Below the pieces are notes generated by a model that worked only from the letters and a program-made list of their open reading frames with translations, did no database searches and was not told the origin of the DNA. The position numbers were made by a program, and so were the translations under genes. Positions 23,212 through 45,021 of a DNA stretch of 64,000 bases are shown here, piece after piece. The stretch covers positions 124,001-188,000 of the IMG/VR virus record IMGVR_UViG_3300022935_000005; one strand, written 5' to 3'. How positions within the stretch are numbered: the stretch's first letter is position 1; every line of letters begins with the position of its first letter.

Positions 23212-23219
23212 AGGGCAAC

Positions 23220-24140: not shown

Positions 24141-25138
24141 TGGTACATGTTGATTATGTTTGGGTTGACGGACTGGAATCACCCCTTGTGCGTTCAAAGA
24201 CAAAGATCGTAACTCCATCTGTAAGCCAGAAAGGTGAAATGGAGATCCAAATTGCTGAATGGACGTTTGACGGCTCCTCGACGAACCAGGCAGTCACAAG
24301 CAACTCTGAGCTTTTGCTTAAGCCACACAGAGTCTATCAGTTATCAGATCAACACTACATTGCTCTTTGCGAAGTCTGTGATCCAGCTTCTGGAGAACCA
24401 CACGACACAAATTACCGAGCCGTCTTAAGGGATAAGATAGCAGAGTCTGGTGACAAGGGACTGTGGGTAGGTTTTGAACAGGAGTTTTTTATCACCAAGA
24501 ACGACAAGAACGTTTTGTGGCCTAAGCATGGTCTGCCACCACAGGACACTAGGTACTACTGTTCCTCTGGTGGACCCATCAGACATAGAAAACTTGTGAG
24601 AGAACACGCTACGATCTGTAACAAGGCTGGAATTAGCGTCGTTGGCTATAATACTGAGGTTTCCCCCGGGCAGTGGGAATATCAAGTATTTGCAGAAGAT
24701 CCGCTAAAGGCTGCTGACGACCTGTGGGTTAGTAGATACATTCTGCAATTGTGTTGTGAGACATACGACATTGGTATAGATTGGCACCCGAAACCGCACG
24801 AGGGCTGGAACGGATCTGGATGTCATACGAATTTTTCGACTAACTCCATGAGAGAATCAGGTGGCGAAGAGTTGTTCAGAGCGATTATGGAAACTGCGTC
24901 AGCCAAACATTCTGAGCATATGCAGAACTACGGGAAGTTGAACAGGAGGAGAATGACAGGAGAGCATGAAACATCTTCTTACAGTGAATTTTCGTGGGGC
25001 GTCGGTTCCAGAAATACAAGTGTCAGAGTCCCTGTGGCGACAGCCGAGGAGTGGAAGGGTTACGTAGAAGACCGCCGCCCCGCTTCAAATTGTGACCCTT
25101 ATAGAGTCGTAAGGTGTGTGCTCGAATATGTAAAGTAG
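24140..25138 (+). CDS. glnII: Glutamine synthetase, type II
   Basis: EWTFDGSSTNQA, GFEQEF, EVSPGQWEYQ, WNGSGCHTNFST, GEHET, RNTSVR, EDRRPASNCDPY; about 330 aa. Confidence 0.9.
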   Translation: MVHVDYVWVDGLESPLVRSKTKIVTPSVSQKGEMEIQIAEWTFDGSSTNQAVTSNSELLLKPHRVYQLSDQHYIALCEVCDPASGEPHDTNYRAVLRDKIAESGDKGLWVGFEQEFFITKNDKNVLWPKHGLPPQDTRYYCSSGGPIRHRKLVREHATICNKAGISVVGYNTEVSPGQWEYQVFAEDPLKAADDLWVSRYILQLCCETYDIGIDWHPKPHEGWNGSGCHTNFSTNSMRESGGEELFRAIMETASAKHSEHMQNYGKLNRRRMTGEHETSSYSEFSWGVGSRNTSVRVPVATAEEWKGYVEDRRPASNCDPYRVVRCVLEYVK

Positions 25139-25140
25139 TT

Positions 25141-25578
25141 ATGGAGAATTTAGAACTTATAGCTACTCATATGTGCAAAGAATCTTGTGTCGGATATCAT
25201 GGTAACCTATTTGGTGGAACCATGCTGGCATGGTTGGATGAAGCCGGTGTCGCCTTCGCTTCACAAGTCTGCGGTTCGCCAAGAATGGTGACAAAGTCAA
25301 TATCAGAAGTCATCTTCGTGCGGCCTGTTCGTCCTGGGCAAATCATAAAGATATACGGTGATGTCGTGAATATTGGCAACACGTCTATTAAGATTAGATT
25401 GTTTGCAAGGCGACACAGCGTAGTGAACGGCTCACAAAAGCCTGTCTGCGATGTTGAGATGACGTTTGTCAGAATTGATGGCGACGGTGAGCCTGTACCA
25501 ATCTTGAATATAAAAGAAAAGTACGCTGATAAAAAGCAGAAGATAGAATCTGAAGTAAGAAAAGATATGGAGTATTGA
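25141..25578 (+). CDS. Hotdog-fold acyl-CoA thioesterase (YciA-like)
   Basis: HGNLFGGTMLAWLDEAG, FVRPV, GNTSI, MTFVRIDGDGEP. Confidence 0.85.
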   Translation: MENLELIATHMCKESCVGYHGNLFGGTMLAWLDEAGVAFASQVCGSPRMVTKSISEVIFVRPVRPGQIIKIYGDVVNIGNTSIKIRLFARRHSVVNGSQKPVCDVEMTFVRIDGDGEPVPILNIKEKYADKKQKIESEVRKDMEY

Positions 25579-26327
25579 TGTTAGATAGAGTTGAATTGTA
25601 TGGCGATGGTATTGGAACAGTAGAGTACGTCGAGCACATGGGCAATGATTTGACAATCGTCAATAGCGCCAGAGTTTCATTTGGAAAGCACAAGGAAGAG
25701 TTAGATGAGAAAGACGAGAAGCTTATTAAGTACCTTGTTAACCACGGCCACACGAGTACGTTCGAGCATAATGTTGTCACTTTTCGCTTTGTGGTTCCTC
25801 TCTTTATTAGGAGCCAGCATCACCGTCATAGGACTTGGAGTTATAACGAGATTAGCAGACGGTATACTGACGTTGATCTAAGGTTTTATGAACCGGATAG
25901 TTTTAGGACCCAGCACAAGAGTAATAGACAGGCAAGCAACGTCCAAGAAGAGGTGGATCCTGTAATAATACCTGACTTAAGTGACGCTGGCTATGGGACG
26001 AGAGCATCACAAGTAGTGAGAGAGCACCATGTCCAGAGCTTGAACCTTTATAACAGTTTACTGTCAGCGGGAGTTTGTAGAGAGCAGGCACGAGGGGTGC
26101 TTCCTCAAAACCTCTACACAGAGTATTACGGGACATGTTCATTACATAACGCTCTTCATTTTTGTCGTCTCCGATTGCACGAGGGCGCCCAGTGGGAAAT
26201 TCAAAGAGTGGCTGAGGCCATGGTACAAATAATGTCGACATTGTATCCTGTCGCTGTGTCTGCGTGGATTGACAACTTGGATGATAAAGACCTCCGAAAA
26301 AAAATGAAAAAAAATATTAGCCTGTAA
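25578..26327 (+). CDS. thyX: FAD-dependent thymidylate synthase
   Basis: HTSTFEH; RHRTWSYNEISRRY (RHR-X7-SxR); EQARGVLP; AQWEI. Confidence 0.95.
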   Translation: MLDRVELYGDGIGTVEYVEHMGNDLTIVNSARVSFGKHKEELDEKDEKLIKYLVNHGHTSTFEHNVVTFRFVVPLFIRSQHHRHRTWSYNEISRRYTDVDLRFYEPDSFRTQHKSNRQASNVQEEVDPVIIPDLSDAGYGTRASQVVREHHVQSLNLYNSLLSAGVCREQARGVLPQNLYTEYYGTCSLHNALHFCRLRLHEGAQWEIQRVAEAMVQIMSTLYPVAVSAWIDNLDDKDLRKKMKKNISL

Positions 26328-28131: not shown

Positions 28132-28917
28132 ATGGCAATAGTAATTAGAGCAAGCGGAACTTCACTGGAAGTCCCCAGTTCACCAACGTCAGACTTTACT
28201 ACCGGTCTGTCTGCTAGATACCTATTCACGTCAGACGCATCAGACTCGTTAGGGAACTATGATACAATGACAGCCGAATCTGCTGTAACTTATGATAGTA
28301 GTAACGGCGTTTACTTTGAGAAAATTGGAAACACAAGTAGGATAAGTCTTGGTGCTGACAGCACATCAACGTCGGCATCTAAGTTACTGAATGATATCGG
28401 TACCAACGACGGCACAATATCATTCTGGCTAAATCCTGACACGAATCAGATAGATGATTCGGGCAATGATGCTTCGTTCATCCTTGGCTCTTACGCTGGT
28501 TCGACTATAGGCACCCGAGGTCCCCAGTTTGGGTACTTCGACGATCAACCGACCGTCAATGGTGACAAGGGCGGGTGGCATTTCTTTAGCCGAGTTGGGA
28601 CCGGTTCATCCTTTGAAGGTGTTCTTTGGGAAGGAGATTCCGGGACTACTTGGGTACATATAGTATTCACTTACGATAGTGCAACCGACACAGCCAAGCT
28701 TTACAAAGATGGAAGCCTAGCAGATACGCAAACGTTTGCTAACGGTTTTCCTCAAGATCGCCGAGAGTGGATAATGAACGGTTCAGCCCAAAGCCCAACC
28801 GCTTCAACACTACAGTGGGAGGGATACTTTAAAGACCTCAGCATTTGGGACGGTCGCATCTTAACAGCAGACGAGATCAGTGATCTTTACGACAACGGTC
28901 ACGGCGGCAGCTACTAG
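28132..28917 (+). CDS. LamG/concanavalin A-like domain protein 1
   Basis: GTISFW, WVHIVFTYD, LYKDG, FKDLSIWDGRILTADEISDLY. Confidence 0.8.
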   Translation: MAIVIRASGTSLEVPSSPTSDFTTGLSARYLFTSDASDSLGNYDTMTAESAVTYDSSNGVYFEKIGNTSRISLGADSTSTSASKLLNDIGTNDGTISFWLNPDTNQIDDSGNDASFILGSYAGSTIGTRGPQFGYFDDQPTVNGDKGGWHFFSRVGTGSSFEGVLWEGDSGTTWVHIVFTYDSATDTAKLYKDGSLADTQTFANGFPQDRREWIMNGSAQSPTASTLQWEGYFKDLSIWDGRILTADEISDLYDNGHGGSY

Positions 28918-28926
28918 GGAGGAATT

Positions 28927-29667
28927 ATGCCGATAATATTTAAGGTAAGTCGCTCCATAGACTTTACAACAGATCTCGTGGCTAGGTATCTTTTTACGTC
29001 AGACACATCAGATTCGCTTGGAAATTATTCAGATGTATACGCTGGTTCTGGTGTTACCTTTGATTCATCTGGGGCACGTATGCAGACCACCTCGAACCAT
29101 AAGATCAAATTTGGCGCTGATGGTTTATCGAATCTATCGACAACATTGAATGATCTAAACGGTGTTGGGGGGACGATATCATTCTGGGTTAAGATGAACA
29201 CAGGGTACACCGCTGGTGGGACTGCTGATAATCGTTATATCTTTGGTTCTTACAGAGGCGGGTCAGCCAACCAGCGTGGGGTCCATTTTGGGTACTTTGA
29301 CCAAAACAGCGTTCTCGCTAGCGGCGCAGGCGGATGGCATTTCTTCAATAGCGCCAGTCCAGCCTCGGCCGGATATGAGGGTATCGTCGCGACTGGTGAC
29401 TCTGGTACTTCTGAGGTGCATATAGTCGTTACTATAGACAACGGTGACTTCCGCATGTACAAAGACGGCTCGCTGGTAGGTACCGAGACTGCAAGTTACT
29501 GGCCTGAATATTCTCTTGAGTGGGAGGTAAATGGCTCTGCTGGAAGCTACCTTACCTCGCGTATGTTCGATGGGTGGTTCAAGGACTTGTGCGTGTGGGA
29601 TGGAAGAGTGTTGTCAGCAGCAGAGGTAGCGGCGTTGTACAGCAATGGATCTGCTGGAAGCTTTTAG
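28927..29667 (+). CDS. LamG/concanavalin A-like domain protein 2
   Basis: GTISFWVK, HIVVT, MYKDG, LCVWDGRVLSAAEVAALY. Confidence 0.8.
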   Translation: MPIIFKVSRSIDFTTDLVARYLFTSDTSDSLGNYSDVYAGSGVTFDSSGARMQTTSNHKIKFGADGLSNLSTTLNDLNGVGGTISFWVKMNTGYTAGGTADNRYIFGSYRGGSANQRGVHFGYFDQNSVLASGAGGWHFFNSASPASAGYEGIVATGDSGTSEVHIVVTIDNGDFRMYKDGSLVGTETASYWPEYSLEWEVNGSAGSYLTSRMFDGWFKDLCVWDGRVLSAAEVAALYSNGSAGSF

Positions 29668-29675
29668 GGGGAAAC

Positions 29676-30470
29676 ATGCCAATCATATTTAAGATAGATA
29701 ATATAATCGACAACTTGGTATCTGCGATAAATTCTCGCTGGAAGCTAGAGACAAATGCTGATGACTCTGTAGGTTCCAACGACGGCACTGTTGTTTCTGC
29801 GACTGGTGCTGGTACAGACGTTTCATTTGGTACCGCTGGGGATACTTCTGCTGCAATCTTTGCGGGAGGACAAGCCAACCAGCACGTCAATGGAAAAATA
29901 TCTCTTCCAACAGCAGCAACAGATGACTTTAACTTTGAATATGGTTCTGGGACGATATCTTTTTGGGTAAGACCTGCAAACATTTCAACGTTTTACATGT
30001 TGTCAGATTACGCACCTTCATCTGAACCGGATGGGTTTGCGTTCTGGCAAGCAATGGACTACTACAGTTATAAGTACGATGAAGAGGGACCGGCCACCCG
30101 GCTTCTCTTGATAAGTTCTCCCTCATCGGACAGCTTAGCAGGATCGGTCTTAGCGGCTTCAAACACTCGGGTTTCCGCTAACAACTGGTCTCACATATGT
30201 TACGTAAAGAACCATAACGTGAGTACATTGTACATAAACGGTGAGCCGGTAGAGCAGAAAGTATGGAATGACAACAGGCCGTTTGTCAGCAGCGCTTCTT
30301 CGCTGGTACCGGGATCAACTAGAAATGTTGGCATCGGTTCTCAGACGGGAACAGTTGGGCAAAGGTATCCGGGAGCTATAAAAGATGTCATTGTTGCCAA
30401 GGGTTACGCGGCGAGCTCTCTTCAAGTCAAGCAGCTTTATTTAGCTGGTAACGAAGCACCTGATCTATAG
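29676..30470 (+). CDS. LamG/concanavalin A-like domain protein 3
   Basis: ATG 29676 (MPIIFK, as in paralogue 2); TISFWVRP, WSHICYV, LYING. Confidence 0.75.
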   Translation: MPIIFKIDNIIDNLVSAINSRWKLETNADDSVGSNDGTVVSATGAGTDVSFGTAGDTSAAIFAGGQANQHVNGKISLPTAATDDFNFEYGSGTISFWVRPANISTFYMLSDYAPSSEPDGFAFWQAMDYYSYKYDEEGPATRLLLISSPSSDSLAGSVLAASNTRVSANNWSHICYVKNHNVSTLYINGEPVEQKVWNDNRPFVSSASSLVPGSTRNVGIGSQTGTVGQRYPGAIKDVIVAKGYAASSLQVKQLYLAGNEAPDL

Positions 30471-30479
30471 GAGAGAACT

Positions 30480-31199
30480 ATGATTATTGTTAGAGCAAGC
30501 GGAACCTCATCGGAATCCCCTAATTTTACTACCGATCTGTCTGTGAGATACCTTCTAACTTCGAACTACGATGATTCCGTCACTTCTGATTCTGCAACTG
30601 CAGTCAGCTCGCCAGACGGAGTTAATTCTGAAGGCTTTTCGTCGAGTCAGGGGTATCTTCAGATGCCGAGCTCATTCGCATCCGCGATGTTTTGGGACAC
30701 TGGAGACGGTACTCTGTCTTGGTGGAACACTTTTGATGAAGTACCCCCTACAAACAACGTCTACGCTTTTACAGATCGTGAAGGTGGAAACTCCAACGAT
30801 ACAGGGGCTATAAGCATTTATCTCGGCGGAGATTACCTCCGGTTTTATAGGAACTACGAAAATTCACAAGGTAATTACGGTCCATCCATGACAAGAGCTG
30901 AGTCAGGGCTAGATTATACCTCGCCTTTTCAGCAGAACCATATCGTCTTAGTTAAGGACACGACATCATCGACTATGAAGGTCTACGTGGACGGTGCCGA
31001 AGTCGATTCTGTGGCCTGGGGCTCAACCGATCAGTGGGTGATCAGCGCATCCAGGACATGGTACATAGGAAACTATAATACGGGTACTTATTATGATTGG
31101 CCTGGTAGAATCGCGGATGTAGCTGTGTGGAAAGGACGTGCACTTAGCGCTAGCGAGGTAACCGCACTCTACAATAAAGGCCAGGGCGGAAGCTACTAG
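30480..31199 (+). CDS. LamG/concanavalin A-like domain protein 4
   Basis: TLSWW, HIVLV, VYVDG, IADVAVWKGRALSASEVTALY. Confidence 0.8.
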   Translation: MIIVRASGTSSESPNFTTDLSVRYLLTSNYDDSVTSDSATAVSSPDGVNSEGFSSSQGYLQMPSSFASAMFWDTGDGTLSWWNTFDEVPPTNNVYAFTDREGGNSNDTGAISIYLGGDYLRFYRNYENSQGNYGPSMTRAESGLDYTSPFQQNHIVLVKDTTSSTMKVYVDGAEVDSVAWGSTDQWVISASRTWYIGNYNTGTYYDWPGRIADVAVWKGRALSASEVTALYNKGQGGSY

Positions 31200-31237: not shown

Positions 31238-31660
31238 ATGAGCTGGATACCACCGAAATCTCCTTTTGATTTACTTCAAGAAAGGTATTGGCCAGACGAT
31301 TGGAAAATTCTGATCGTCTGTCTTTTATTGAACCAAACAAGCCGTAAACAAGTTGAGCCAATGATCGAGTCATTCTTCGAGAAGTGGCCTGATCCAGAGT
31401 CAGCTTCCAATGCTGATGAAGATGAGATGCGTGATCTTGTCCGTCCTCTTGGCATGTTCAACCGCCGGGTGAAATCCATCAAAAAGATGTCTCAACAGTT
31501 CATGTCTGGTTTCGATAACGCAATCGAGCTTTATGGTTGTGGAAAGTATGCCGATGACACCTACCGAATCTTTATGAAGGGTGAGTGGAGAGATGTTGAG
31601 CCAAATGATCATGCTCTGAACGATTATCACGGATATTTACGGGAGGTGTATTCTGCCTGA
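31238..31660 (+). CDS. MBD4-like HhH-GPD mismatch DNA glycosylase (stand-alone catalytic domain)
   Basis: WIPPKSPFDLLQE...WKILIVCLLLNQTS...PLGM..RR...ELYGCGKYADDTYRIF...WRDVEPNDHALNDYH parallels the recalled MBD4 glycosylase domain. Confidence 0.85.
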   Translation: MSWIPPKSPFDLLQERYWPDDWKILIVCLLLNQTSRKQVEPMIESFFEKWPDPESASNADEDEMRDLVRPLGMFNRRVKSIKKMSQQFMSGFDNAIELYGCGKYADDTYRIFMKGEWRDVEPNDHALNDYHGYLREVYSA

Positions 31661-32465
31661 AGGTCCTGAGGTAAAGAAGACCACAGACGGATTGAGAGAG
31701 TTCTTCTTAAATGAGGAGATAACTGCTCTAGATTTCGGATCTGGAAGGTACGCCAAGAAAGAACCCATCGGCTACTCATCTTTTTGCGAAGAACTTCCAA
31801 AGCTGGTGACAGCAGTTGGATGCAAGGGAAAGTTCATCTATTTTGTGTTTGCAGACGGCAGCAGCATGTGGAACACTTTAGGCATGACAGGATGGTGGTC
31901 AGAGACAGCAGGCTATCATCCTCGCGCTGCGTTGTATGTCAATGATGATAAACATATGGTGTATAACGATATGAGGAATTTTGGGACCTTCAAGTTTGTC
32001 AGCACATACGATGAGCTAAAGAAGAAACTTAACTCCTTAGGCCCAGACTTGCTCTCTGAAGATGTTTCGTTAGATGTATTTAAGAAAAGCCTTACGAAAG
32101 GAAAGAGGGCTGAGAAACCCATCTCGCAACTCTTGATGGATCAATCTGTCGTGTCAGGAATTGGAAACTACCTCAAGGCAGAGATCTTGTACAGCTGCAA
32201 GATGTCTCCTCATCGGCTGTGTCAAGATATCTCTGATGGCGAGTTCGAGTCGCTGCTTTACGCTTCAAGAAGTATTATGAAGTTATCGTATAGCACTGGT
32301 GGTGCGACCATCCGAAATTATAAAAGCACGACTGGTAAAAATGGCATGTACACTAGAAGGTTCGCTGTCTATAATCAAAAGAGTGATCCTCTTGGAAACG
32401 CTGTAGTCAGAGAAACGACGGCTGATAAAAGGACCACACACTGGGTTCCAAGTATTCAGAAATAA
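31653..32465 (+). CDS. Fpg/Nei-family DNA glycosylase/AP lyase with zincless finger; CTG start
   Basis: CTG-CCT-GAA-GGT-CCT-GAG-GTA = (M)PEGPEV with SD GGAGGT 5 nt upstream; KGKF, GMTG, DMRNFG, H2TH LMDQSVVSGIGNYL, RTTHWVPSIQ. Confidence 0.9.
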   Translation: MPEGPEVKKTTDGLREFFLNEEITALDFGSGRYAKKEPIGYSSFCEELPKLVTAVGCKGKFIYFVFADGSSMWNTLGMTGWWSETAGYHPRAALYVNDDKHMVYNDMRNFGTFKFVSTYDELKKKLNSLGPDLLSEDVSLDVFKKSLTKGKRAEKPISQLLMDQSVVSGIGNYLKAEILYSCKMSPHRLCQDISDGEFESLLYASRSIMKLSYSTGGATIRNYKSTTGKNGMYTRRFAVYNQKSDPLGNAVVRETTADKRTTHWVPSIQK

Positions 32466-32707: not shown

Positions 32708-33073
32708 ATGCAAGATAGGCTAGAGCAGATTTTTGAACTCCGCCAGGAGTTTATGTCTAAGATTAATCAAAAGATACCGGGAGCTTACCCTGAATGGCCC
32801 ATTGATCTTTCTTCAAAGGCAGATCAGAAAGCTGTTCGAGAATTTGCGTTCCGAGGTATGGAAGAGCTCTTTGAGGCTCTGTTACATCTCAAGAACTGGA
32901 AAGACCATAGAGCTGGGTCTGGTGACTTTGATCGAGACGAGTTTGTTGAAGAGATGATTGATGCCTATAAATACTTTACTGCAATTTTGATTCTCATGGG
33001 TGTAGATAGCCAGGAGTTTTTCGAGTGCTACGTTAATAAGCACAATAAGATTTGCGATAGGCTAAATCAATGA
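32708..33073 (+). CDS. All-alpha dNTP pyrophosphatase (dimeric dUTPase / T4 gp56 dCTPase-like)
   Basis: EELFEA, KNWKDH, EEMIDAYKY, YVNKHNKICDR motifs. Confidence 0.75.
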   Translation: MQDRLEQIFELRQEFMSKINQKIPGAYPEWPIDLSSKADQKAVREFAFRGMEELFEALLHLKNWKDHRAGSGDFDRDEFVEEMIDAYKYFTAILILMGVDSQEFFECYVNKHNKICDRLNQ

Positions 33074-34321: not shown

Positions 34322-37300
34322 ATGCGTCGTTCATCTCTTCTTGTGCCTGACAGGTTCATCTCTCTTCATTCCCATGATGGGTTTAGTACCTTCGATGGCT
34401 TAGGCTATCCTCAAGAGCACATCGATTTTGTGATTGAGAATGGGATGGACGGGTGGTGTCTTACCAACCATGGTCACATGAATTCTTTCGGTCACGCTTT
34501 TTTGCACGCTGAAAAGATTGCGAAGCGTGGCGGAAACTTTAAGTTTGTACCAGGGTGCGAGATGTATGTCCATCCTGATCTAGATGCGTGGCGCCTTGAC
34601 ATGCAGATCCGAGAAGCTGCTAAGAAGGGTGATAAGGCCGCGCTCATGACTCTTCGTTCTCAGCGAGAAGCTATTGCTACACCACTGACTGCAATTGTTG
34701 ATGGTGATGACGAAATTGTAGATGTTGGCACCGAAGATGCTGGTCTCACTGTTGAGAATGAAGAAGAAACCAAGTCTGCAAAGTTCTATGATCCAATCAA
34801 ACGCCGCCATCATTTGGTAGTCCTTCCCAAGACGAGCGAAGGTCTCCAGCGTCTTTTTCACCTCGTCAGTAAGGGGTATCAGGAGGGCTTCTATCGCTTC
34901 CCACGTATCGACTATAAGATGCTAAAGGAAGCGGCCGCTGGTGGTCATCTGATGGTTTCTACAGCTTGTATCGGCGGTCCAATCGCTTACGAGGTTTTCC
35001 GTCATGCTCAGCAAGTTGAGTTTGATGATCTTTCGTATAAGTTGATGGATGACCCGACTTTCCGAAACAACGTCTTGACTGGCGTTGGAAATGCGTACCA
35101 GGGTCTTGTAGACGCTGTTGGTATCGATGATGTTAATCTCGAACTTCAATTTAATAAGCTTCCTGCGCAGCATCTGGTCAACCGCGCGATTATTGAGTTT
35201 GCTAACAAGAACGGGCTACAAGATAAGCTGGTAGTCACAACCGATTCTCACTACGCACGTCCAGAACACTGGCGAGAGCGTGAGCTCTATAAGAAGCTTG
35301 GGTGGCTTAACTATCGAGAGTTTGATCCCTCCAAGTTGCCGCAAGGTATTGAAGACTTGAAGTGTGAACTATATCCTAAGAACAACGAACAGGTTTGGGA
35401 TACGTACCTTAAGACAACTGACGGTATGGATTTTTATGATGATGAGGTAGTGCACAACGCCATCACTCGCCCGTATGATCTTGTCCACAACGAAATCCAA
35501 CAGATTACCCCTGATCGTTCGATGAAGCTGCCCTCTTACGTCGTTCCTGAAGGTACTACTGACGATAAGGCTCTACTTGAAGCCTGTAAGAAGGGTTTGG
35601 TCGAGCGTGGTCTTGCGCACGATGAAAAGTACATCAAGCGTCTCAAGTATGAGCTAAAGATCATCAAGGAAAAGAATTTTTCTCGATATTTCTTGACCAT
35701 GGGCGCCATCATCGATATCGCTAAGAAGGCGATGCTGGTCGGTCCAGGCCGCGGTTCTGCTGCCGGAAGTCTCGTGGCGTATGTTCTCCGTCTTACCGAC
35801 GTTGATCCATTTGAGTATGATCTCATGTTTGAGAGGTTCCTCAACCCAAGCCGTGAAGGTGCACCAGATATTGATACTGATGTAGGTGACCGTGATCTTC
35901 TTATCAACATGATGAAAGAGGAGTGGGGCGACGAAAACATCGTTCCAATCTCTAACTACAACACTTTTAAGCTTAAGTCTCTGGTCAAGGACATCTCTCG
36001 CTTTTACGGGATCCCGTTCGATGAAGTCAACAAGGCTTTGGCTCCTGTAGAGGATGACGTGAAGCGTGCCGTGTTCAAGCCCGGCACTGATAAAAACTTG
36101 TTTGTCTTGCTTTATGAAGATGCGATTGCTCACTCGAAGACATTTCGCGACTTTATTGAGAAGTACCCTGAGGTTGCCGAGCCGATTCAGGTACTCTTTA
36201 AGCAGAACAAGGCACTTGGCCGCCACGCCGGTGGATGTATTGTTTCGGAAAACATCGCTGAGCGTATGCCTCTGATTAAAGCCCGCGGCGAACTACAAAC
36301 TCCGTGGGTTGAAGGTATGAACTACAAGCATCTTGAAACCTTCGGCTGGATTAAGTTTGACCTTCTCGGTCTTGAAACACTACGTATTGTTCAGCGTACT
36401 ATCGAGCTGATTCTTCAGCGCCGGGAGGGTATCGAGGATCCGACATTCTCGCAAGTCTATGAGTGGTTCAACAATAACATGGACCCCAAGGTTCTCGATA
36501 TGGACGACCAGCATGTTTATAAGCATGTCTACGAAGAAGGTCGCTTCCCAGGAGTCTTCCAGCTGGCTGGTCGAGGTGCTAGAAACCTCTTTATGAAAGC
36601 AAAGCCCAAGAGCATCATCGACATTGCTACTCTGACATCGATTTATCGCCCGGGCCCTCTCACTGCGAAAGTAGACAAACTGTATATCCAGGCAAAGAAC
36701 AACCCTGATGATATTGACTACGGCCATCCTCTTATCAAGGAAGTTCTTGAAGAGACATACGGTATGATTGTCTTCCAAGAGCAGATCATGAAGTTGTGTT
36801 CCGTGGTGGCTGGCTTCCCGGAGGAGGAAACGGACACAGTCCGCCGGAGCATTATGAAGCGTAAAGCTTCTGAAGCCGCTGAGTCCCTTGCTAAGGCTCG
36901 AGCGATTAAGGAACAGTTTGTTGCTGGTGCCGTCAAGAATGGTGTCGACGCACAGCTTGCCGATGATCTGTACGAAAAGATTCTCTACTTCTCAGGCTAC
37001 GGTTTCAATAAGGCGCACGCTGTTTCGTACGCTATTGACTCGTACTACTGCGCTTGGCTTCTAACATACTTTGAGGAAGAGTGGCTTTGCGCTTATCTCG
37101 AGGCGATGTCTGGTAATGACAAGAAGCGTAGTAAGGCCTTTGGTGAGGTTAAGGCTCTCGGCTATCGAGTCGTTCCGCTTGATATCAATTATGCAACCAA
37201 GAAGTGGACTATCCTCGACGGTAAGAAGTTCATGCCTTCTTTCCTTTCTTGTAAGGGCGTCGGAGAATCTGCGATCGATGAGATTGTCGCTAATCGGCCG

Positions 37301-37936
37301 TACCAGAATATCGACGATCTGTTATGGGACGAGGATGGTAAGTGGCGCCACTCTAAGTTCAACAAGCGGGCAATGGAAGCGTTAATTAATATTCGCGCAT
37401 TCGAATCCATGGATCTTGTAGGCGACGGTAAGACATTCGAGAGCTATAAGCACATGCATGAAGTCATTATAAACCGGAACACCGATATCAAGAAATGGAC
37501 TAAGCGTGATCCAGAGCGAGGAAAGAGTAATTTCAAAGAGGCGCTATTGGATACTGAGGGAATCGGTAATTGGACCCGTCGTGAGATGGTCGAAAATAGC
37601 ATGAAGCATTTCGGTTCATTTAACGCCTCCACACTCGTTAATGAGGAAATTCAGGCTCGGCTCTCTAAGAAGAATGTACGTTGTATCGATGACATCGACG
37701 AGCATGATGTATATTGGTTCTTGGTGACAGACGCTAAGCCGAAGCTTACTAAAAACAAGAAGCCATATCTTTTGGTGACGGCCACAGGACTAGACGGCAA
37801 AAATATCAGGATATTCTGCTGGGGCTGGGATGGTCAGACAGAGTTGCCCCTCTACAGCCTTTGTGTTGCAGAAGTTAAGAAAAATGATTTCGGATATCAA
37901 ACTTCTATGAGTAAAGTCAAGCTTCTTCGTATATGA
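34322..37936 (+). CDS. dnaE: DNA polymerase III alpha subunit (family C)
   Basis: PHP domain (SLHSH, TNHG, DSHY), GPGRGSAAGSLVAY, PDIDTD, KFDLLGL, YGFNKAHA. Confidence 0.95.
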   Translation: MRRSSLLVPDRFISLHSHDGFSTFDGLGYPQEHIDFVIENGMDGWCLTNHGHMNSFGHAFLHAEKIAKRGGNFKFVPGCEMYVHPDLDAWRLDMQIREAAKKGDKAALMTLRSQREAIATPLTAIVDGDDEIVDVGTEDAGLTVENEEETKSAKFYDPIKRRHHLVVLPKTSEGLQRLFHLVSKGYQEGFYRFPRIDYKMLKEAAAGGHLMVSTACIGGPIAYEVFRHAQQVEFDDLSYKLMDDPTFRNNVLTGVGNAYQGLVDAVGIDDVNLELQFNKLPAQHLVNRAIIEFANKNGLQDKLVVTTDSHYARPEHWRERELYKKLGWLNYREFDPSKLPQGIEDLKCELYPKNNEQVWDTYLKTTDGMDFYDDEVVHNAITRPYDLVHNEIQQITPDRSMKLPSYVVPEGTTDDKALLEACKKGLVERGLAHDEKYIKRLKYELKIIKEKNFSRYFLTMGAIIDIAKKAMLVGPGRGSAAGSLVAYVLRLTDVDPFEYDLMFERFLNPSREGAPDIDTDVGDRDLLINMMKEEWGDENIVPISNYNTFKLKSLVKDISRFYGIPFDEVNKALAPVEDDVKRAVFKPGTDKNLFVLLYEDAIAHSKTFRDFIEKYPEVAEPIQVLFKQNKALGRHAGGCIVSENIAERMPLIKARGELQTPWVEGMNYKHLETFGWIKFDLLGLETLRIVQRTIELILQRREGIEDPTFSQVYEWFNNNMDPKVLDMDDQHVYKHVYEEGRFPGVFQLAGRGARNLFMKAKPKSIIDIATLTSIYRPGPLTAKVDKLYIQAKNNPDDIDYGHPLIKEVLEETYGMIVFQEQIMKLCSVVAGFPEEETDTVRRSIMKRKASEAAESLAKARAIKEQFVAGAVKNGVDAQLADDLYEKILYFSGYGFNKAHAVSYAIDSYYCAWLLTYFEEEWLCAYLEAMSGNDKKRSKAFGEVKALGYRVVPLDINYATKKWTILDGKKFMPSFLSCKGVGESAIDEIVANRPYQNIDDLLWDEDGKWRHSKFNKRAMEALINIRAFESMDLVGDGKTFESYKHMHEVIINRNTDIKKWTKRDPERGKSNFKEALLDTEGIGNWTRREMVENSMKHFGSFNASTLVNEEIQARLSKKNVRCIDDIDEHDVYWFLVTDAKPKLTKNKKPYLLVTATGLDGKNIRIFCWGWDGQTELPLYSLCVAEVKKNDFGYQTSMSKVKLLRI

Positions 37937-37990: not shown

Positions 37991-39013
37991 ATGCACTTAG
38001 GCACTTATGAAGGTTTCACTGACTGTTATGTTGATATGATTTCAAAGGTCATGCGTGAACCGCAATACGAATCTGCACCTCGCGGCCAGAATATCAAAGA
38101 GATCCTCGGGGCTTCATTTACAATCAAGAACCCTCGTGACAGAATTCCTTACGTCGTAGGTCGTAAGTTTAGCATGAGTTACATGGTCGCTGAGCTGATA
38201 TGGTATCTTGCGGGTGATAATAGTACTGAGTGGATATCGAAGTATTCATCCTTCTGGAAAGATATTAGTGACGACGGTGTGACTGCAAATTCAGCGTATG
38301 GTGCCCGTCTCTTTAAGCCGCATGACAAGATTGCGCAGGGCAGATATACTCAGCTCGATTACGTGATTGAAGAGCTTAAACGAGATCCTGATTCTCGGCG
38401 AGCTGTCATGCATCTAAGAGTTCCAGATGACTCTATTGATGCGAAGCTTGATGTACCTTGTACACTAGCTCTACAGTTTTTTATTAGAAACGGTGCTCTA
38501 CACCAAGTTGCTAACATGAGAAGCTCGGACTTGATTTTTGGGATTGCTTACGATATTCCCGCATTCACAATGTTTCAAGAACTGATTGCAAATGAGCTTG
38601 GCGTTGATGTGGGTACGTACACTCACACAAGCAACTCACTCCATATCTACGAACGTCATTTTGATATGGCTGAAGAGATTACTAGAACGGGCCTCGTTGA
38701 TGAATCGCTGAATCTACAACAGGCAAATGGTCCTATGCCACCGCTGGTAGGTGATATCAAAGAAGTCCAAGAGAAGGTGGCTGAAGTCTACGAGTATGAA
38801 TCCCAACTACAGCGTTGCGAGAATTTACAGGATGTAATAAACCTACATGATTTAAGCCAGTCTTTCTCTGATTCTATGTTCCGTGATTTTGCAACTATTC
38901 TTACGTCATCTCGTCTAAGAAAACTTGGTCATAAAGCGGATGCGCGAGCAATGTCCGCGCAGACGTCCTTTAGCGGATATTCTTTTAATGTCAGGAGTAA
39001 CTCTAATGCATAA
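37991..39013 (+). CDS. dCMP hydroxymethylase-like thymidylate synthase homologue (T4 gp42-like)
   Basis: ELIWY, NSAYG, DSRRAV, PCT (Cys157), MRSSDLIFGIAYD with Asp188 at the ThyA Asn177 position, SLHIYERHF. Confidence 0.85.
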   Translation: MHLGTYEGFTDCYVDMISKVMREPQYESAPRGQNIKEILGASFTIKNPRDRIPYVVGRKFSMSYMVAELIWYLAGDNSTEWISKYSSFWKDISDDGVTANSAYGARLFKPHDKIAQGRYTQLDYVIEELKRDPDSRRAVMHLRVPDDSIDAKLDVPCTLALQFFIRNGALHQVANMRSSDLIFGIAYDIPAFTMFQELIANELGVDVGTYTHTSNSLHIYERHFDMAEEITRTGLVDESLNLQQANGPMPPLVGDIKEVQEKVAEVYEYESQLQRCENLQDVINLHDLSQSFSDSMFRDFATILTSSRLRKLGHKADARAMSAQTSFSGYSFNVRSNSNA

Positions 39014-40151: not shown

Positions 40152-40162
40152 GGAGATTTGTA

Positions 40163-41733: not shown

Positions 41734-41734
41734 C

Positions 41735-42727
41735 ATGAGTTTGCGTAAAGCGTTAGTTACAGGGTGTTGTGGTTTTATTGGATCTCATCTTACTAGGATG
41801 TTAGTAGGACAAGGTTGGTACGTAGAGGGTGTTGATGATTTGTCGAACGGCGATCTTACATCTATCGATGACCTAAAATTCAGAGCAGTACATGATTCTT
41901 TGTTACCGTTCTATAATGCTGAACCCTCGGCTGGTAGTCTTCTTGTGATGACGTGCGATTTCGCTTCGCCAGCTGTCTTAGAGAGGGTTACAACTGGAAG
42001 TTATGATGTTATTTTCCATCTTGCTGCAAACCCCCGTGTTGAGTTCTCCGTACAAAATCCAGCTTTGACAACTAATGATAACGTTCAAAAGACTGTAGAG
42101 CTGATGTCAGCCGCAAGAAATAATATCGATCGTTTTGTCTTCGCTGCTTCTTCTGCCGCATATGGAAACGGTGTAGAGTTGCCTACTACAGAACAAGAGC
42201 AGTGTAATCCCACTTCACCATATGGTCTACAGAAGCTTGTTGTAGAGCAATTCGGTAAGCTGTATAGTGAGTTATACGGCATGGATTTTGCCGCCTTGAG
42301 GTTCTTCAATGTGTACGGTCCAGGTCAGGACGGGACTAGCCCTTACTCAACAGCAATATCTGCTTGGTGCACACGCCTAAAGAAAGGTGAGCCTCTACGA
42401 AGTGATGGTGACGGCCAGCAGTCAAGAGATCTAGTCTATGTCGAAGATGTAGCTAGCGCTCTAACGCAGGTAGCGAATCATCCAGAGAGACTTGGGTTTG
42501 AGGTCTTTAATGTTGGGACCGGTATTGCCTTGACGAACAAAGAAGTTCTAGATCATCTGACAAAGCTGTTTCCTGATGCTGAAGTAAATCATGCTCCTGA
42601 AAGACCTGGCGACGTTAAGCACACTCTAGCTGCCGCTGATCACATCAAGGAGAAAATTGGGTGGGAACCTAAGGTTGAATTTTGGGATGGTCTGACAGCC
42701 ACACTAGAGTGGTGGAAGCTAGCATGA
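41735..42727 (+). CDS. NAD-dependent NDP-sugar epimerase/dehydratase (extended SDR, GalE/WbpP-like)
   Basis: TGCCGFIGSH, FHLAA, ASSAAYG, YGLQK, LRFFNVYG, GDGQQSRD. Confidence 0.9.
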   Translation: MSLRKALVTGCCGFIGSHLTRMLVGQGWYVEGVDDLSNGDLTSIDDLKFRAVHDSLLPFYNAEPSAGSLLVMTCDFASPAVLERVTTGSYDVIFHLAANPRVEFSVQNPALTTNDNVQKTVELMSAARNNIDRFVFAASSAAYGNGVELPTTEQEQCNPTSPYGLQKLVVEQFGKLYSELYGMDFAALRFFNVYGPGQDGTSPYSTAISAWCTRLKKGEPLRSDGDGQQSRDLVYVEDVASALTQVANHPERLGFEVFNVGTGIALTNKEVLDHLTKLFPDAEVNHAPERPGDVKHTLAAADHIKEKIGWEPKVEFWDGLTATLEWWKLA

Positions 42728-44069: not shown

Positions 44070-44624
44070 ATGAGTAAGGTTTATTCTACGATCTTAGCCG
44101 ATCCACCCTGGATGCAACGTGGAGGTGGTAAATCAAAACGAGGTGCTGACAGGCACTACCCTTTGATGAAAGAGGCAGATATCAAGAAAGTCATGTCTGA
44201 CATGCTGGATGGCAAAGTGGCCGACAATGCTCACATGTATATGTGGGTCGCCAATAACCACCTTCCTGAAGCGCTGAGAATAATAGAGCATCTGGGTTTC
44301 AAATATATCACCAATCTTGTATGGGCTAAGACTCATTTCGGTTTAGGAAGGTACTTCCGCGGCCAGCATGAGCTGTGCATATTCGCTACTAAGGGCCGCG
44401 GCTTTTCTGCTAGGACACAAGCTAATAACGTTCCCTCCCTTATTGGGGGTAAACTAGTTTCTCCTACCCGCCACAGTGCGAAGCCCGCCGAGATGTACGA
44501 ATTGATAGAAGGTAGAAGTGAGGGCCCCTTTCTGGAGCTGTTTGCGAGGACGAGACGCCCCGGCTGGGATGCGTTGGGTAATGAAGTACCTGAGGAAAAA
44601 GATGCAAAGACCGAACTGGGATGA
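44070..44624 (+). CDS. MT-A70 family N6-adenine (or N4-cytosine) methyltransferase
   Basis: ILADPPW, HYPLM, GLGRYFRGQHE, HSAKP, LELFAR, WDALGNE. Confidence 0.9.
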   Translation: MSKVYSTILADPPWMQRGGGKSKRGADRHYPLMKEADIKKVMSDMLDGKVADNAHMYMWVANNHLPEALRIIEHLGFKYITNLVWAKTHFGLGRYFRGQHELCIFATKGRGFSARTQANNVPSLIGGKLVSPTRHSAKPAEMYELIEGRSEGPFLELFARTRRPGWDALGNEVPEEKDAKTELG

Positions 44625-45021
44625 CATATGGATGAAGTTTGCCTATTTGATTGCTGACCGGTCATATGACCCGCGTCACAAGGTGGGTTCTGTAGTTGTT
44701 ACTGACTCAAACACACAAGTGCTAGCAATAGGCTACAATGGAAATTATTCAGGCGGTCCAAATGAAGTCGAGTCAAACACACCTGGCGAGTCTGGCATGA
44801 TCCACGCGGAGATCAATGCAATGATAAAGCTAGACTTCAATAATCCGAATAGAAAGATAATGTATTTGACGCTAAGTCCTTGTCGAGCCTGCGCGAAAGC
44901 TATTGTCAATGGTGGCATTTCTGAGGTGGTGTACAGCGAAGAATATCGCGATACTTCTGGCTTAGAACTACTAAGTCACGCAGGAGTCAAAGTCAGAAGG
45001 CACGATATTAAGCAACTCTAG
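44602..45021 (+). CDS. dCMP deaminase
   Basis: RPNWD, GYNG, HAEINA, PCRAC. Confidence 0.9.
   Translation: MQRPNWDDIWMKFAYLIADRSYDPRHKVGSVVVTDSNTQVLAIGYNGNYSGGPNEVESNTPGESGMIHAEINAMIKLDFNNPNRKIMYLTLSPCRACAKAIVNGGISEVVYSEEYRDTSGLELLSHAGVKVRRHDIKQL

What the first reader, a model, noticed from the sequence alone, without database searches (positions are those of the whole stretch)
31238..31660. Stand-alone MBD4-like glycosylase in a phage: a likely repair partner for modified cytosine
The 140-aa protein follows the eukaryotic MBD4 catalytic domain nearly motif for motif. Recalled human sequence: WTPPRSPFNLVQE...WKLLIATIFLNRTS...PLGL...IELHGIGKYGNDSYRIF...WKQVHPEDHKLNKYH. The substrate-recognition Gln and Tyr and the catalytic Asp (NDHAL) are retained. 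MBD4 excises T, U and 5-hydroxymethyluracil opposite G, which are the deamination products of 5mC, C and 5hmC. Inference: the phage carries a repair enzyme for deaminated (glycosyl-)hmC, which host Ung would not remove. It may also bear on the origin of eukaryotic MBD4.
Basis: partly seen in the sequence, partly recalled or inferred. Interest (0 to 1): 0.8.

Follow-up and report, generated by a model that had tools for sequence, protein, structure and literature searches.

The report
Phage MBD4-type glycosylase paired with Nei
An uncultured 281-kb salt-marsh/marine bacteriophage carries a stand-alone copy of the enzyme domain that animals use (in MBD4) to cut out deaminated methyl-cytosine, fused in an operon with a second repair glycosylase and sitting among genes that replace cytosine by a modified cytosine, so it is most likely a repair kit for the phage's own modified DNA.

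Summary
ORF 31238-31660 (+) encodes a 140-aa protein that matches the human and mouse MBD4 glycosylase domain over its full length (E 1e-37, about 44% identity). The AF2 model has pLDDT 97 and TM 0.95 to MBD4 crystal structures. MutY, Nth and Mig match far worse. Gln449, Tyr540 and Asp560 equivalents are kept. The Arg468 plug is Gln, Gly471 is Arg and Lys562 is Ala, a signature shared by a whole clade of viral stand-alone proteins.

A Mimivirus-Nei1-like Fpg/Nei gene starts at a CTG codon and overlaps the stop by 8 nt. This pair recurs in 47 of 80 related viral contigs.

The window is a jumbo bacteriophage. It encodes a MazG-like NTP pyrophosphohydrolase, ThyX, a dCMP deaminase and a thymidylate-synthase homologue with the hm-dCMP-synthase signature, followed by UDP-galactopyranose mutase, a glycosyltransferase and an epimerase. 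An independent lineage, the XP12-like 5mC phages, places a homologue one gene from its dCMP methylase.

The repair-of-deaminated-modified-cytosine reading is well supported by context but untested biochemically. The origin of eukaryotic MBD4 cannot be resolved. I found no paper describing this viral family.

The parts
31238..31660 (+). Stand-alone MBD4-type HhH DNA glycosylase, 140 aa. Q14, Y104 and D124 are the equivalents of human Q449, Y540 and D560. Clade-specific residues are Q33, R36 and A126.
31653..32465 (+). Fpg/Nei-family (H2TH) glycosylase/AP lyase, 270 aa. It starts at CTG directly before the catalytic Pro-Glu (PEGPEV). The C-terminus has no zinc-finger cysteines. The closest solved relative is Mimivirus Nei1.
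   Evidence: Pfam Fapy_DNA_glyco + H2TH + Fapy_DNA_glyco_C; NCBIfam fpg 8.8e-44; PDB 3A42/3A45/3VK7/4NRW at E 4e-57 versus bacterial Fpg at 4.5e-23; start and alignment
31653..31660 (+). 8-nt overlap CTGCCTGA. It contains the start codon and Pro codon of the Nei gene and the TGA stop of the MBD4-like gene. The same xTGCCTGA overlap occurs in relatives with GTG, ATG or TTG.
31641..31648 (+). Shine-Dalgarno-like GGGAGGTG, ending 4 nt before the CTG start (5-nt spacing) of the Nei gene and lying inside the end of the MBD4-like ORF.
   Evidence: read from the sequence
32708..33073 (+). MazG-like nucleotide pyrophosphohydrolase, 121 aa. It is a candidate dCTP-clearing enzyme.
   Evidence: phrog_12184 at E 1e-13 and phrog_173. 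XP12-like phages have an annotated nucleotide pyrophosphohydrolase directly after their MBD4-like gene. Direct pairwise similarity to the XP12 protein is only marginal, E 0.06.
37991..39013 (+). Thymidylate-synthase-family pyrimidine C5 transferase, 340 aa, with the dCMP hydroxymethylase signature. In E. coli ThyA numbering: E58, L143D, C146, D169 and N177D.
   Evidence: PDB best hit MilA CMP 5-hydroxymethylase at 1.8e-40 versus ThyA at 1e-23; alignment with T4 gp42 and the XP12 enzyme; residue rules in PMC13326640
38925..40151 (+). UDP-galactopyranose mutase (GLF). The true start is probably near 39010, just after the TS homologue.
   Evidence: Pfam GLF at 1.1e-77; the same order of genes in L001
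40163..41218 (+). Glycosyltransferase-like protein, 351 aa.
   Evidence: Pfam Glyco_trans_1_2 at 5e-6
41735..42727 (+). NAD-dependent sugar-nucleotide epimerase/dehydratase.
   Evidence: Pfam Epimerase at 1.1e-52
44518..45021 (+). dCMP/cytidine deaminase.
   Evidence: Pfam dCMP_cyt_deam_1 at 2.5e-19
25575..26327 (+). ThyX flavin-dependent thymidylate synthase. It supplies dTMP, so the ThyA-like homologue is free for another role.
   Evidence: Pfam Thy1 at 1.5e-49; tblastn
34322..37936 (+). DnaE-type DNA polymerase III alpha. It is the replication-module anchor between the glycosylase pair and the modification genes.
   Evidence: conserved synteny

Best explanation
The ORF encodes a monofunctional helix-hairpin-helix DNA glycosylase of the MBD4 type. 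It flips a pyrimidine that is mispaired with guanine into a pocket lined by L12-L13-Q14, L31, R36, Y104 and D124-H125-A126. Asp124 drives hydrolysis of the glycosidic bond, which leaves an abasic site.

The likely substrates are the deamination products of the phage's own C5-modified cytosine: 5-hydroxymethyluracil, possibly carrying a sugar, and also U and T opposite G. Host uracil-DNA glycosylase cannot remove these 5-substituted bases.

The downstream gene is translationally coupled to the first. It encodes a Mimivirus-Nei1-like Fpg/Nei enzyme with an N-terminal Pro-Glu and a zincless finger. This enzyme most likely incises the abasic site by beta,delta-elimination, and may also remove oxidised or deaminated 5-substituted pyrimidines itself. 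Phage FEN/5'-3' exonucleases, polymerases and a ligase would then finish the repair.

The pair sits in the replication and nucleotide-metabolism module of a jumbo phage. That phage appears to replace cytosine through a MazG-like NTPase, a gp42/MilA-type dCMP hydroxymethylase and a dCMP deaminase, with ThyX supplying dTMP, and probably glycosylates the product using UDP-galactopyranose mutase, a glycosyltransferase and an epimerase.

Shown here: family membership, fold, catalytic residues, conservation of the gene pair, and the cytosine/hydroxymethyl signature of the TS homologue. Inferred: the substrate range, the division of labour with Nei, and the nature of the DNA modification.
For: Identity of the enzyme:
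- PDB phmmer gives E 1e-37 over the full length.
- The AF2 model has pLDDT 97, with TM 0.93-0.96 and rmsd about 1 A to MBD4-DNA complexes, including G:T and G:5hmU complexes.
- Asp560 and Tyr540 equivalents are invariant in 63 of 63 clade members, and Gln449 is kept in 59 of 63.
- In human MBD4, Gln449 is essential, Tyr540, Gln449 and the Val448 backbone read the base, and the 5-hydroxymethyl group of 5hmU makes no protein contact (PMC3479182).

Partner gene:
- Its best PDB hits are Mimivirus Nei1 entries at E 4e-57.
- The 8-nt overlap is conserved.
- In 80 viral contigs an Fpg/Nei gene lies downstream on the same strand in 47, directly adjacent in 28, and never upstream or on the opposite strand.
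- E. coli Nei, Nth and MutM are reported to excise 5-hmU mispaired with G (Hori et al. 2003, as cited in PMC2673420).

Modification context:
- The TS homologue matches MilA at 1.8e-40, better than ThyA.
- It carries N177D, L143D and D169, as do T4 gp42 and all 24 TS homologues found next to relatives. The XP12 enzyme has Asn at position 143, as expected of a methylase (rules in PMC13326640).
- The window also has ThyX, a dCMP deaminase, a MazG-like NTPase, GLF, a glycosyltransferase and an epimerase.

Independent lineages:
- XP12-like Bradleyvirinae (5mC DNA per PMC7653180) keep the order MBD4-like, NTP pyrophosphohydrolase, TS homologue, dCMP deaminase, DHFR.
- Two other jumbo-phage lineages have a UDP-sugar pyrophosphorylase directly upstream of the MBD4-like gene; both have Fpg/Nei downstream, and one (L102) also has a GT2 glycosyltransferase nearby.
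Against: - No biochemical data exist for any member of the viral clade.
- The Arg468 plug, which locks the flipped base in human MBD4 (PMC3479182), is Gln here and Gln or Leu in most of the clade. Two pocket-lining positions differ: G471R and K562A. Specificity may therefore differ from MBD4.
- A TS homologue was seen within 10 kb in only 24 of 80 viral contigs. The rest cannot be judged because only flanks were available.
- The co-occurrence rests on a few related lineages and has not been tested statistically.
- The sugar genes could serve capsid or cell-surface glycosylation rather than DNA.
- RNA-library contigs cover the genes, but transcription is not proven.
Confidence: 0.6

Rival explanations
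1. The pair is general-purpose base excision repair with no special link to DNA modification. Large phages that persist in sunlit, oxidising water would carry a G:U/G:T mismatch glycosylase and a Nei for oxidised pyrimidines simply to repair ordinary deamination and oxidation damage.
For: - 56 of 80 related viral contigs show no TS homologue within 10 kb.
- In L097 the neighbour is a Pol-beta-thumb (PolX-like) gene, a generic BER polymerase.
- The window carries many other repair and stress genes: UvsX, two FEN-like exonucleases, an SOD-like protein and GroEL.
- MBD4 also removes plain U opposite G (PMC3458566 abstract).
Against: - Every TS homologue found near the gene is of the cytosine-specific hydroxymethylase type (24 of 24).
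- Among 50,697 deposited phage records, full-length homologues occur almost only in the 5mC-containing XP12 group, beside the dCMP-modifying enzyme.
- Sugar-nucleotide genes adjoin the gene in further lineages.
- A host Ung would already handle G:U.
Confidence: 0.2
2. The pair is a counter-defence. The glycosylase pair would reverse enzymatic deamination of phage DNA by host or competitor cytosine deaminases, rather than spontaneous damage.
For: The predicted chemistry is the same. Modified cytosines remain deaminable, and their products escape host Ung (established knowledge of Ung specificity). Phage and bacterial deaminases acting on C and 5mC in single-stranded DNA exist (preprint 10.1101/2024.12.05.627091).
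Against: No defence or anti-defence signature was found: PADLOC gives only a marginal hit. The gene sits in the core replication module with stable synteny across divergent phages, not in a variable anti-defence island.
Confidence: 0.1
3. The enzyme is a step of the modification pathway or an offensive enzyme. It would excise unmodified or wrongly modified bases, from phage DNA as quality control or from host DNA as a weapon, rather than deamination products.
For: Glycosylase-like enzymes do take part in thymidine hypermodification (aG/PT-PPlase, mentioned in PMC8256090). Pocket residues G471R and K562A differ from MBD4.
Against: The uracil/thymine-reading Gln and Tyr are conserved. In MBD4, cytosine in the pocket behaves as an inhibitor, not a substrate (PMC3479182). 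The fixed partnership with a repair-type Nei fits repair.
Confidence: 0.05

Closest known systems
Human/mouse MBD4 (MED1) C-terminal glycosylase domain (PDB 4DK9, 3IHO, 4E9G, 4EW0, 6VJW and others)
   Same: The size is the same at about 140 aa, with an HhH fold and no Fe-S cluster. Identity is about 44% over the full length, with TM 0.95. The Asp560, Gln449, Tyr540, Asn467, Thr469 and Leu506 equivalents are kept.
   Different: There is no MBD domain or linker. Arg468 is Gln, Gly471 is Arg, Lys562 is Ala and Leu508 is Met. The gene is encoded by a bacteriophage and is translationally coupled to a Nei gene.
Xanthomonas phage XP12 hypothetical protein QNN97216.1 and its Bradleyvirinae orthologues (annotated 'endonuclease III' or 'ENDO3c domain-containing protein')
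   Same: These are stand-alone phage proteins in the same starred clade. They lie next to nucleotide pyrophosphohydrolase, TS-homologue and dCMP deaminase genes in a phage with fully C5-modified cytosine.
   Different: Identity is only 33%. They have an N-terminal extension, Trp instead of Arg at the 471 position, Lys at 562 and Gly at 561. No adjacent Nei gene is present. Their TS homologue has the methylase signature, with Asn at position 143.
Plant MBD4L (Arabidopsis MBD4-like)
   Same: It is an MBD4-type glycosylase domain without a methyl-CpG-binding domain (PMC9266487).
   Different: The plant protein keeps a long N-terminal extension and is nuclear. The phage protein is the bare domain.
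Mig.MthI / thermostable thymine-DNA glycosylase (PDB 1KEA) and the E. coli Vsr endonuclease
   Same: The logic is the same: a G:T-mismatch enzyme that accompanies a 5-methylcytosine-producing system (own knowledge). Mig is also an HhH enzyme (TM 0.67).
   Different: Mig is a 220-aa Fe-S cluster protein of the Nth/MutY type, with E only 1.6e-3. Vsr is an unrelated endonuclease.
Mimivirus Nei1 (L315; PDB 3A42, 3A46, 3VK8), for the partner gene
   Same: The match covers the full length at E 4e-57. Both have N-terminal Pro-Glu, an H2TH motif and a C-terminus without zinc-finger cysteines.
   Different: The phage gene belongs to a bacteriophage, uses a CTG start, and is fused in an operon with the MBD4-type gene.
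T4 gp42 dCMP hydroxymethylase and Streptomyces MilA, for the TS homologue
   Same: Cys146, Glu58, N177D, L143D and D169 are the same. MilA is the best PDB hit.
   Different: Identity to gp42 is 27%. The phage protein has a C-terminal extension like MilA. It is followed by UDP-galactopyranose mutase rather than the T4 glucosyltransferases.

Membership tests
MBD4-type HhH DNA glycosylase domain | Compact HhH-GPD fold of about 140 aa without an Fe-S cluster, superposable on MBD4 | tested here: met
   Pfam HhH-GPD; AF2 pLDDT 97; TM 0.93-0.96 and rmsd about 1 A to 16 MBD4 structures
MBD4-type HhH DNA glycosylase domain | Catalytic Asp (human D560) | tested here: met
   D124 aligns with D560; invariant in 63 of 63 viral-clade and 86 of 86 eukaryote-type sequences
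MBD4-type HhH DNA glycosylase domain | Base-reading Gln449 and Tyr540 | tested here: met
   Q14 and Y104. Tyr is kept in 63 of 63 and Gln in 59 of 63 clade members. Roles are described in PMC3479182.
MBD4-type HhH DNA glycosylase domain | Arg468 (Lys/Arg) plug that fills the gap left by the flipped base | tested here: not met
   Q33 in the window. The clade has Q in 42, L in 12 and R/K in 5 of 63, against K/R in 69 of 86 eukaryote-type sequences. An Arg appears three residues later, at the G471 position, in 59 of 63.
MBD4-type HhH DNA glycosylase domain | Closer to MBD4 than to Nth, MutY or Mig in sequence and tree | tested here: met
   E 1e-37 versus 1e-4 or weaker. The best non-self representatives are eukaryotic MBD4 proteins at 45-50% identity.
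MBD4-type HhH DNA glycosylase domain | Excision of T, U and 5hmU opposite G | not testable with these tools
   Needs enzyme assays.
Full-length MBD4 protein | N-terminal methyl-CpG-binding domain plus linker | tested here: not met
   The protein is 140 aa, with only the HhH-GPD domain.
Fpg/Nei (H2TH) glycosylase/lyase (neighbour gene) | N-terminal catalytic Pro-Glu, H2TH motif and C-terminal finger | tested here: met
   PEGPEV follows the CTG start. Three Pfam domains match. The match to Mimivirus Nei1 covers the full length. No zinc-finger cysteines were seen in the C-terminus.
dCMP hydroxymethylase (T4 gp42 / MilA type) within the thymidylate synthase superfamily | Catalytic Cys146, N177D (cytosine), L143D/E (hydroxymethyl rather than methyl) and D169 retained (not a 5-hydroxy-dCMP synthase) | tested here: met
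   Signature E/D/C/D/D at T4 gp42 positions 60/145/148/171/179. The residue rules come from PMC13326640. Activity was not tested.
Anti-phage defence glycosylases (Brig1/Dag type) | Match to defence-system profiles, or a defence-island context | tested here: not met
   PADLOC gives only a marginal 0.003 hit to a nicking-endonuclease model. The context is a phage replication module.

The most novel reading that the evidence does not exclude
The glycosylase domain of eukaryotic MBD4 descends from this viral stand-alone family. On this reading, the eukaryotic enzyme that guards 5-methylcytosine against deamination was first invented by phages to protect their own C5-modified cytosine DNA. Eukaryotes would have captured it later and fused it to an MBD domain. 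In the outgroup-rooted tree the eukaryotic sequences form one clade, which is sister to the marine jumbo-phage clade and nested among deeper stand-alone viral branches.
Probability: 0.2. Interest if true: 0.8.

Novelty: new variant of a known kind. Interest (0 to 1): 0.62.

Why it matters
Phage DNA hypermodification is studied mostly as biosynthesis and as evasion of restriction. How such genomes are maintained is hardly addressed. Deaminated 5mC, 5hmC and glycosyl-hmC become T, hmU or glycosyl-hmU, which host Ung ignores.

A conserved two-glycosylase cassette (MBD4-type plus Nei-type) travels with cytosine-modifying genes in at least two unrelated phage groups. That would be a dedicated repair arm of the modification system.

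The cassette also offers compact 140-aa natural variants of MBD4 with altered plug and pocket residues. These could be useful as tools for detecting deaminated modified cytosine. Finally, it adds a viral sister group to the question of where the eukaryotic 5mC-repair enzyme came from.

Tried and rejected
- **Phage DNA similarity.** Megablast of 4 kb against 50,697 phage records found nothing. The phage has no cultured close relative; DnaE is at most 30% identical to known phage enzymes.
- **tRNA scan.** No tRNA genes in the window.
- **PHROGs.** No family for the 140-aa protein.
- **PADLOC.** No meaningful defence match.
- **Literature.** Seven full-text searches found no description of phage MBD4-type glycosylases: MBD4 with bacteriophage; XP12 with glycosylase; 'MBD4-like' with phage; MetaGPA with glycosylase; phage-encoded glycosylase with hydroxymethylcytosine; MBD4 origin; S-TIM54. 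Subscription journals are not covered.
- **Rooting the family.** I used E. coli Nth, MutY and a viral Mig-like protein as outgroups. The outgroup branches are very long (3.8-8.6 changes per site), the basal nodes have 11-53% support, and the AU test does not reject monophyly of all stand-alone forms (p = 0.24). I therefore rejected any claim about the direction of transfer.
- **Genome scan of 185,579 species representatives.** The first attempt with the broad alignment failed because no stretch was conserved enough. The narrower alignment found only 2 MAG contigs. One of these shares a PrkA-SpoVR cluster with a bona fide 298-kb viral contig. I therefore do not count them as cellular homologues. 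The search patterns were narrow, so absence from bacteria is not shown.
- **5-hydroxy-dCMP synthase idea.** I considered that the TS homologue might be of the RB69/RL38J1 type because of the GLF and glycosyltransferase neighbours. I rejected this on the diagnostic residue: D169 is retained rather than D169N.
- **MazG-like protein versus the XP12 neighbour.** Pairwise comparison gives only E 0.06. Homology is not claimed.
- **S-TIM54.** Its homologue is truncated and very divergent (72% coverage, branch length 3.46, Glu at the Gln449 position). I left it out of the argument, noting only that its genome is annotated with a DNA alpha-glucosyltransferase.
- **Protein P0196.** The context look-up returned only an 842-bp contig.
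Full report
**1. The observation.** An ORF runs from ATG 31238 to TGA 31660 on the + strand and encodes 140 aa. It carries one Pfam domain, HhH-GPD (E 1.5e-13).

Against all PDB sequences the protein aligns end to end (residues 2-136) with the glycosylase domain of human and mouse MBD4 at E 1.3e-37 to 1.6e-36. The next families are MutY (1e-4), the Mig thymine glycosylase 1KEA (1.6e-3) and endonuclease III (4.5e-3).

An AlphaFold2 model built on 48 homologues has mean pLDDT 97. Foldseek against the PDB returns 16 MBD4 glycosylase-domain structures at TM 0.92-0.96, rmsd 0.9-1.6 A and 43-45% identity. These include the complexes with G:T and G:5hmU DNA. Mig reaches only TM 0.67. The resemblance is therefore real, specific and far beyond chance.

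**2. Residues.** I numbered the human sequence from the alignment. The roles of the residues come from PMC3479182.

| Human residue | Window residue | Role in human MBD4 |
|---|---|---|
| Gln449 | Q14 | Essential; reads N3/O2 of the base |
| Tyr540 | Y104 | Reads O2 of the base |
| Asp560 | D124 | Catalytic |
| Arg468 | Q33 | Fills the hole left by the flipped base and 'locks' it |
| Gly471 | R36 | Lines the pocket |
| Lys562 | A126 | Lines the pocket |
| Leu508 | M73 | No role stated in the passages read; lies in the 503-511 DNA-binding loop |

The other four differ. In an alignment of 150 dereplicated homologues these differences are clade signatures:

| Position (human) | Viral clade (63 sequences) | Eukaryote-type (86 sequences) |
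|---|---|---|
| 468 | Q or L in 54 | K or R in 69 |
| 471 | R in 59 | G or A in 73 |
| 562 | A in 58 | K or M in 66 |
| Asp560, Tyr540 | invariant | invariant |

So the chemistry is conserved, but the DNA-intercalating loop and the pocket wall are remodelled. The 5-hydroxymethyl group of 5hmU makes no contact in human MBD4 (PMC3479182), so bulky C5 groups are conceivable substrates. Whether R36 takes over the plug role is an inference.

**3. What the window is.** The genes run almost entirely on one strand. They include the following:
- Structural and lysis genes: a T4-type baseplate protein and a peptidoglycan amidase.
- Replication and recombination genes: gp32, UvsX, two FEN-type 5'-3' exonucleases, DnaB and DnaE.
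- Nucleotide metabolism genes: class I RNR, ThyX and a dCMP deaminase.
- Other functions: ClpP, a GroEL-type chaperonin and two sigma-70-like factors.

The identical protein lies on IMG/VR contig IMGVR_UViG_3300022935_000005 (280,913 bp) and three further assemblies. Salt-marsh RNA libraries hold the region without a single difference, although DNA carry-over cannot be excluded. No cultured phage is close. The window is an uncultured jumbo bacteriophage.

Directly downstream lies an Fpg/Nei-family gene, with Pfam Fapy_DNA_glyco, H2TH and Fapy_DNA_glyco_C and NCBIfam fpg at 8.8e-44.

The ORF lister starts it at TTG 31692, which would delete the catalytic N-terminus. Alignment with orthologues shows that it begins at CTG 31653, immediately before PEGPEV. 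A GGGAGGTG Shine-Dalgarno sequence ends 4 nt upstream of that codon (5-nt spacing). The gene overlaps the TGA stop of the MBD4-like gene by 8 nt (CTGCCTGA). Orthologues have the same xTGCCTGA overlap with ATG, GTG or TTG. Across 80 viral contigs the codon before the catalytic Pro is ATG in 27, TTG in 6, GTG in 5, CTG in 5 (this phage, in four independent assemblies plus the window), ATT in 3 and ATC in 2.

Its closest solved relatives are the Mimivirus Nei1 structures (E 4e-57 over the full length, against 4.5e-23 for bacterial Fpg). No zinc-finger cysteines were seen in its C-terminus.

In those 80 contigs an Fpg/Nei gene lies downstream on the same strand in 47. It is directly adjacent in 28, and it is never upstream or on the opposite strand. 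The functional unit is therefore a two-glycosylase cassette. Because MBD4 is monofunctional, the simplest reading is that Nei supplies the AP-lyase step. E. coli Nei, Nth and MutM are also reported to excise 5hmU opposite G (Hori et al. 2003, as cited in PMC2673420), so the partner may share substrates with the first enzyme.

**5. Link to cytosine modification.**
- Two genes after Nei lies a MazG-like nucleotide pyrophosphohydrolase (phrog_12184, E 1e-13).
- After DnaE comes a thymidylate-synthase homologue. Its best PDB match is MilA, a CMP 5-hydroxymethylase (1.8e-40, against 1e-23 for ThyA).
- In alignment with T4 gp42 and the XP12 enzyme, the TS homologue has Asp at the N177 position (cytosine specificity), Asp at L143 (hydroxymethyl rather than methyl) and retains D169 (so it is not a 5-hydroxy-dCMP synthase). 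These rules come from PMC13326640.
- ThyX elsewhere in the window covers dTMP synthesis.
- The TS homologue is followed by UDP-galactopyranose mutase, a glycosyltransferase-like protein and a sugar-nucleotide epimerase. This arrangement recalls the Rhizobium phage RL38J1 cluster described in PMC13326640. The phage probably makes 5hmC DNA and may glycosylate it.
- In relatives at 41-65% identity the order glycosylase, (Nei), DnaE, TS homologue is conserved. A TS homologue was found within 10 kb of the glycosylase in 24 of 80 viral contigs, and all 24 carry the same signature.

**6. Independent lineages.**
- Among 50,697 deposited phage genomes, only 17 records match the protein. Thirteen of them are XP12-like Bradleyvirinae. 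XP12 is described as carrying 5mC in place of C (PMC7653180).
- In these phages the homologue is annotated as hypothetical protein, 'endonuclease III' or 'ENDO3c'. It lies directly upstream of a nucleotide pyrophosphohydrolase, the TS homologue (signature with Asn at 143, as expected of a methylase), a dCMP deaminase and DHFR.
- In two further jumbo-phage lineages (contigs of 298 and 369 kb) a UDP-sugar pyrophosphorylase gene sits directly upstream of the MBD4-like gene, with Fpg/Nei downstream in both and a GT2 glycosyltransferase near the 298-kb one.
- The TIM5-like cyanophage S-TIM54 has a truncated, very divergent homologue, and its genome is annotated with a DNA alpha-glucosyltransferase (PMC10087341).

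The association with C5-modified or sugar-decorated cytosine therefore recurs. It rests on a handful of lineages and on 10-kb flanks, and I could not run a relatedness-corrected test.

**7. Phylogeny and origin.** A HMMER scan of 1.84 billion representatives finds 2,613 homologues, 88 of them at E <= 1e-30. The best non-self hits, at 45-50% identity, are long proteins with a C-terminal domain. Those that carry names are from a bivalve, a sea slug ('MBD domain-containing protein') and the holozoan Pigoraptor.

In an ML tree of 150 sequences the window protein, 52 other stand-alone proteins and the XP12 group form one starred clade (100/91), apart from the long, eukaryote-type sequences.

With E. 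coli Nth, MutY and a viral Mig-like protein as outgroups, the eukaryote-type sequences are one clade (92/90). That clade is sister to the marine phage clade (94/76), and the two join at 90/87. Divergent stand-alone forms, including XP12, branch deeper. Those deep nodes have 11-53% support, and the outgroup branches are extremely long. The AU test does not reject monophyly of all stand-alone forms (p = 0.24). The data are compatible with a viral origin of the eukaryotic domain, with the reverse, or with ancient divergence.

A pattern scan of 185,579 prokaryotic species genomes found only two MAG contigs. At least one of them shares a PrkA-SpoVR cluster with a viral contig. Among prokaryotic sequences the family looks virus-borne, within the limits of narrow search patterns.

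**8. Comparison with what is known, and novelty.** The protein is a member of the MBD4-type glycosylase family by sequence, fold, catalytic residues and tree. It fails two features of the human protein: the MBD domain and the Arg468 plug.

[quoted passage not shown] PHROGs has no family for the protein. Deposited phage genomes call it hypothetical or endonuclease III. Seven full-text searches found no paper that describes phage MBD4-type glycosylases or their pairing with Nei.

I rate it a new variant of a known kind. It is a virus-borne, stand-alone clade with its own plug and pocket signature. It has a fixed operon partner and a recurrent association with cytosine-modifying genes.

**9. Verdict.** The evolutionary remark stays open. 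Rival readings remain possible: generic BER, counter-defence against deaminases, or a role in the modification pathway. All three are less well supported.

Noticed in passing
window 31641-31660 and 31653-32465: The Fpg/Nei gene must start at a CTG codon for its catalytic N-terminal Pro to be exposed. The ORF lister instead starts it at TTG 31692. Orthologues in other viral contigs use ATT or ATC at the same position. This suggests deliberately weak or coupled initiation of the second glycosylase.
   Followed up: yes
window 37991-42727: A dCMP-hydroxymethylase-type TS homologue is followed by UDP-galactopyranose mutase, a glycosyltransferase-like protein, a 172-aa ORF and a sugar-nucleotide epimerase. 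This is a candidate pathway for a furanosyl (galactofuranose?) decoration of 5hmC. It resembles the RL38J1 cluster of PMC13326640, except that D169 is retained.
   Followed up: partly
window 28132-31199: Four tandem paralogous genes of about 240-260 aa lie inside the replication module, directly upstream of the glycosylase. Two match Laminin_G_3/ConA-like lectin. They share an N-terminal 'MPIIFK' and a C-terminal '...ALY..G' motif. Their function is unknown.
   Followed up: partly
window 32708-33073; L008 8392-9165; L011 6399-7202: A MazG-like NTP pyrophosphohydrolase lies close to the MBD4-like gene in both the marine jumbo phages and the XP12-like phages. It is a candidate dCTP-clearing enzyme. 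Pairwise similarity between the two groups is only marginal (E 0.06).
   Followed up: partly
L102 8951-10414; L103 8496-10432: In two other jumbo-phage lineages (298 kb and 369 kb) a UDP-sugar pyrophosphorylase (UDPGP) gene sits immediately upstream of the MBD4-like gene.
   Followed up: no
L097 (NHDW01000006.1, 'Methylococcaceae TMED69' MAG, 306 kb) and L098 (JBBAUR010000009.1, 'Bdellovibrionota' MAG): These MAG contigs carry the phage-type gene. L098 shares a PrkA-SpoVR cluster with viral contig L102. L097 has a Pol-beta-thumb (PolX-like) gene just downstream. Both may be jumbo-phage contigs binned as bacteria.
   Followed up: partly
window 22609-25578, 46907-47620, 58934-60511: The window carries an unusual set of auxiliary genes for a phage: ClpP, a glutamine-synthetase-like protein, a thioesterase, an SOD-like protein and a GroEL-type chaperonin. 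Relatives carry NifU/Fe-S assembly genes, or isocitrate lyase plus malate synthase (L001, L003).
   Followed up: no
L003 105-3488; L014 7011-8837 and 12006-16088: Relatives of the window phage have inteins in their RNR large subunit, DnaB and DnaE genes. The window's own copies are intein-free, judging by their length.
   Followed up: no
L013 1-2582 (Aeropyrum pernix spindle-shaped virus 1): An archaeal virus carries a generic Mig/MutY-like HhH glycosylase two genes from a DNA methyltransferase. This is the same 'modifier plus mismatch glycosylase' logic built on a different HhH subfamily.
   Followed up: no
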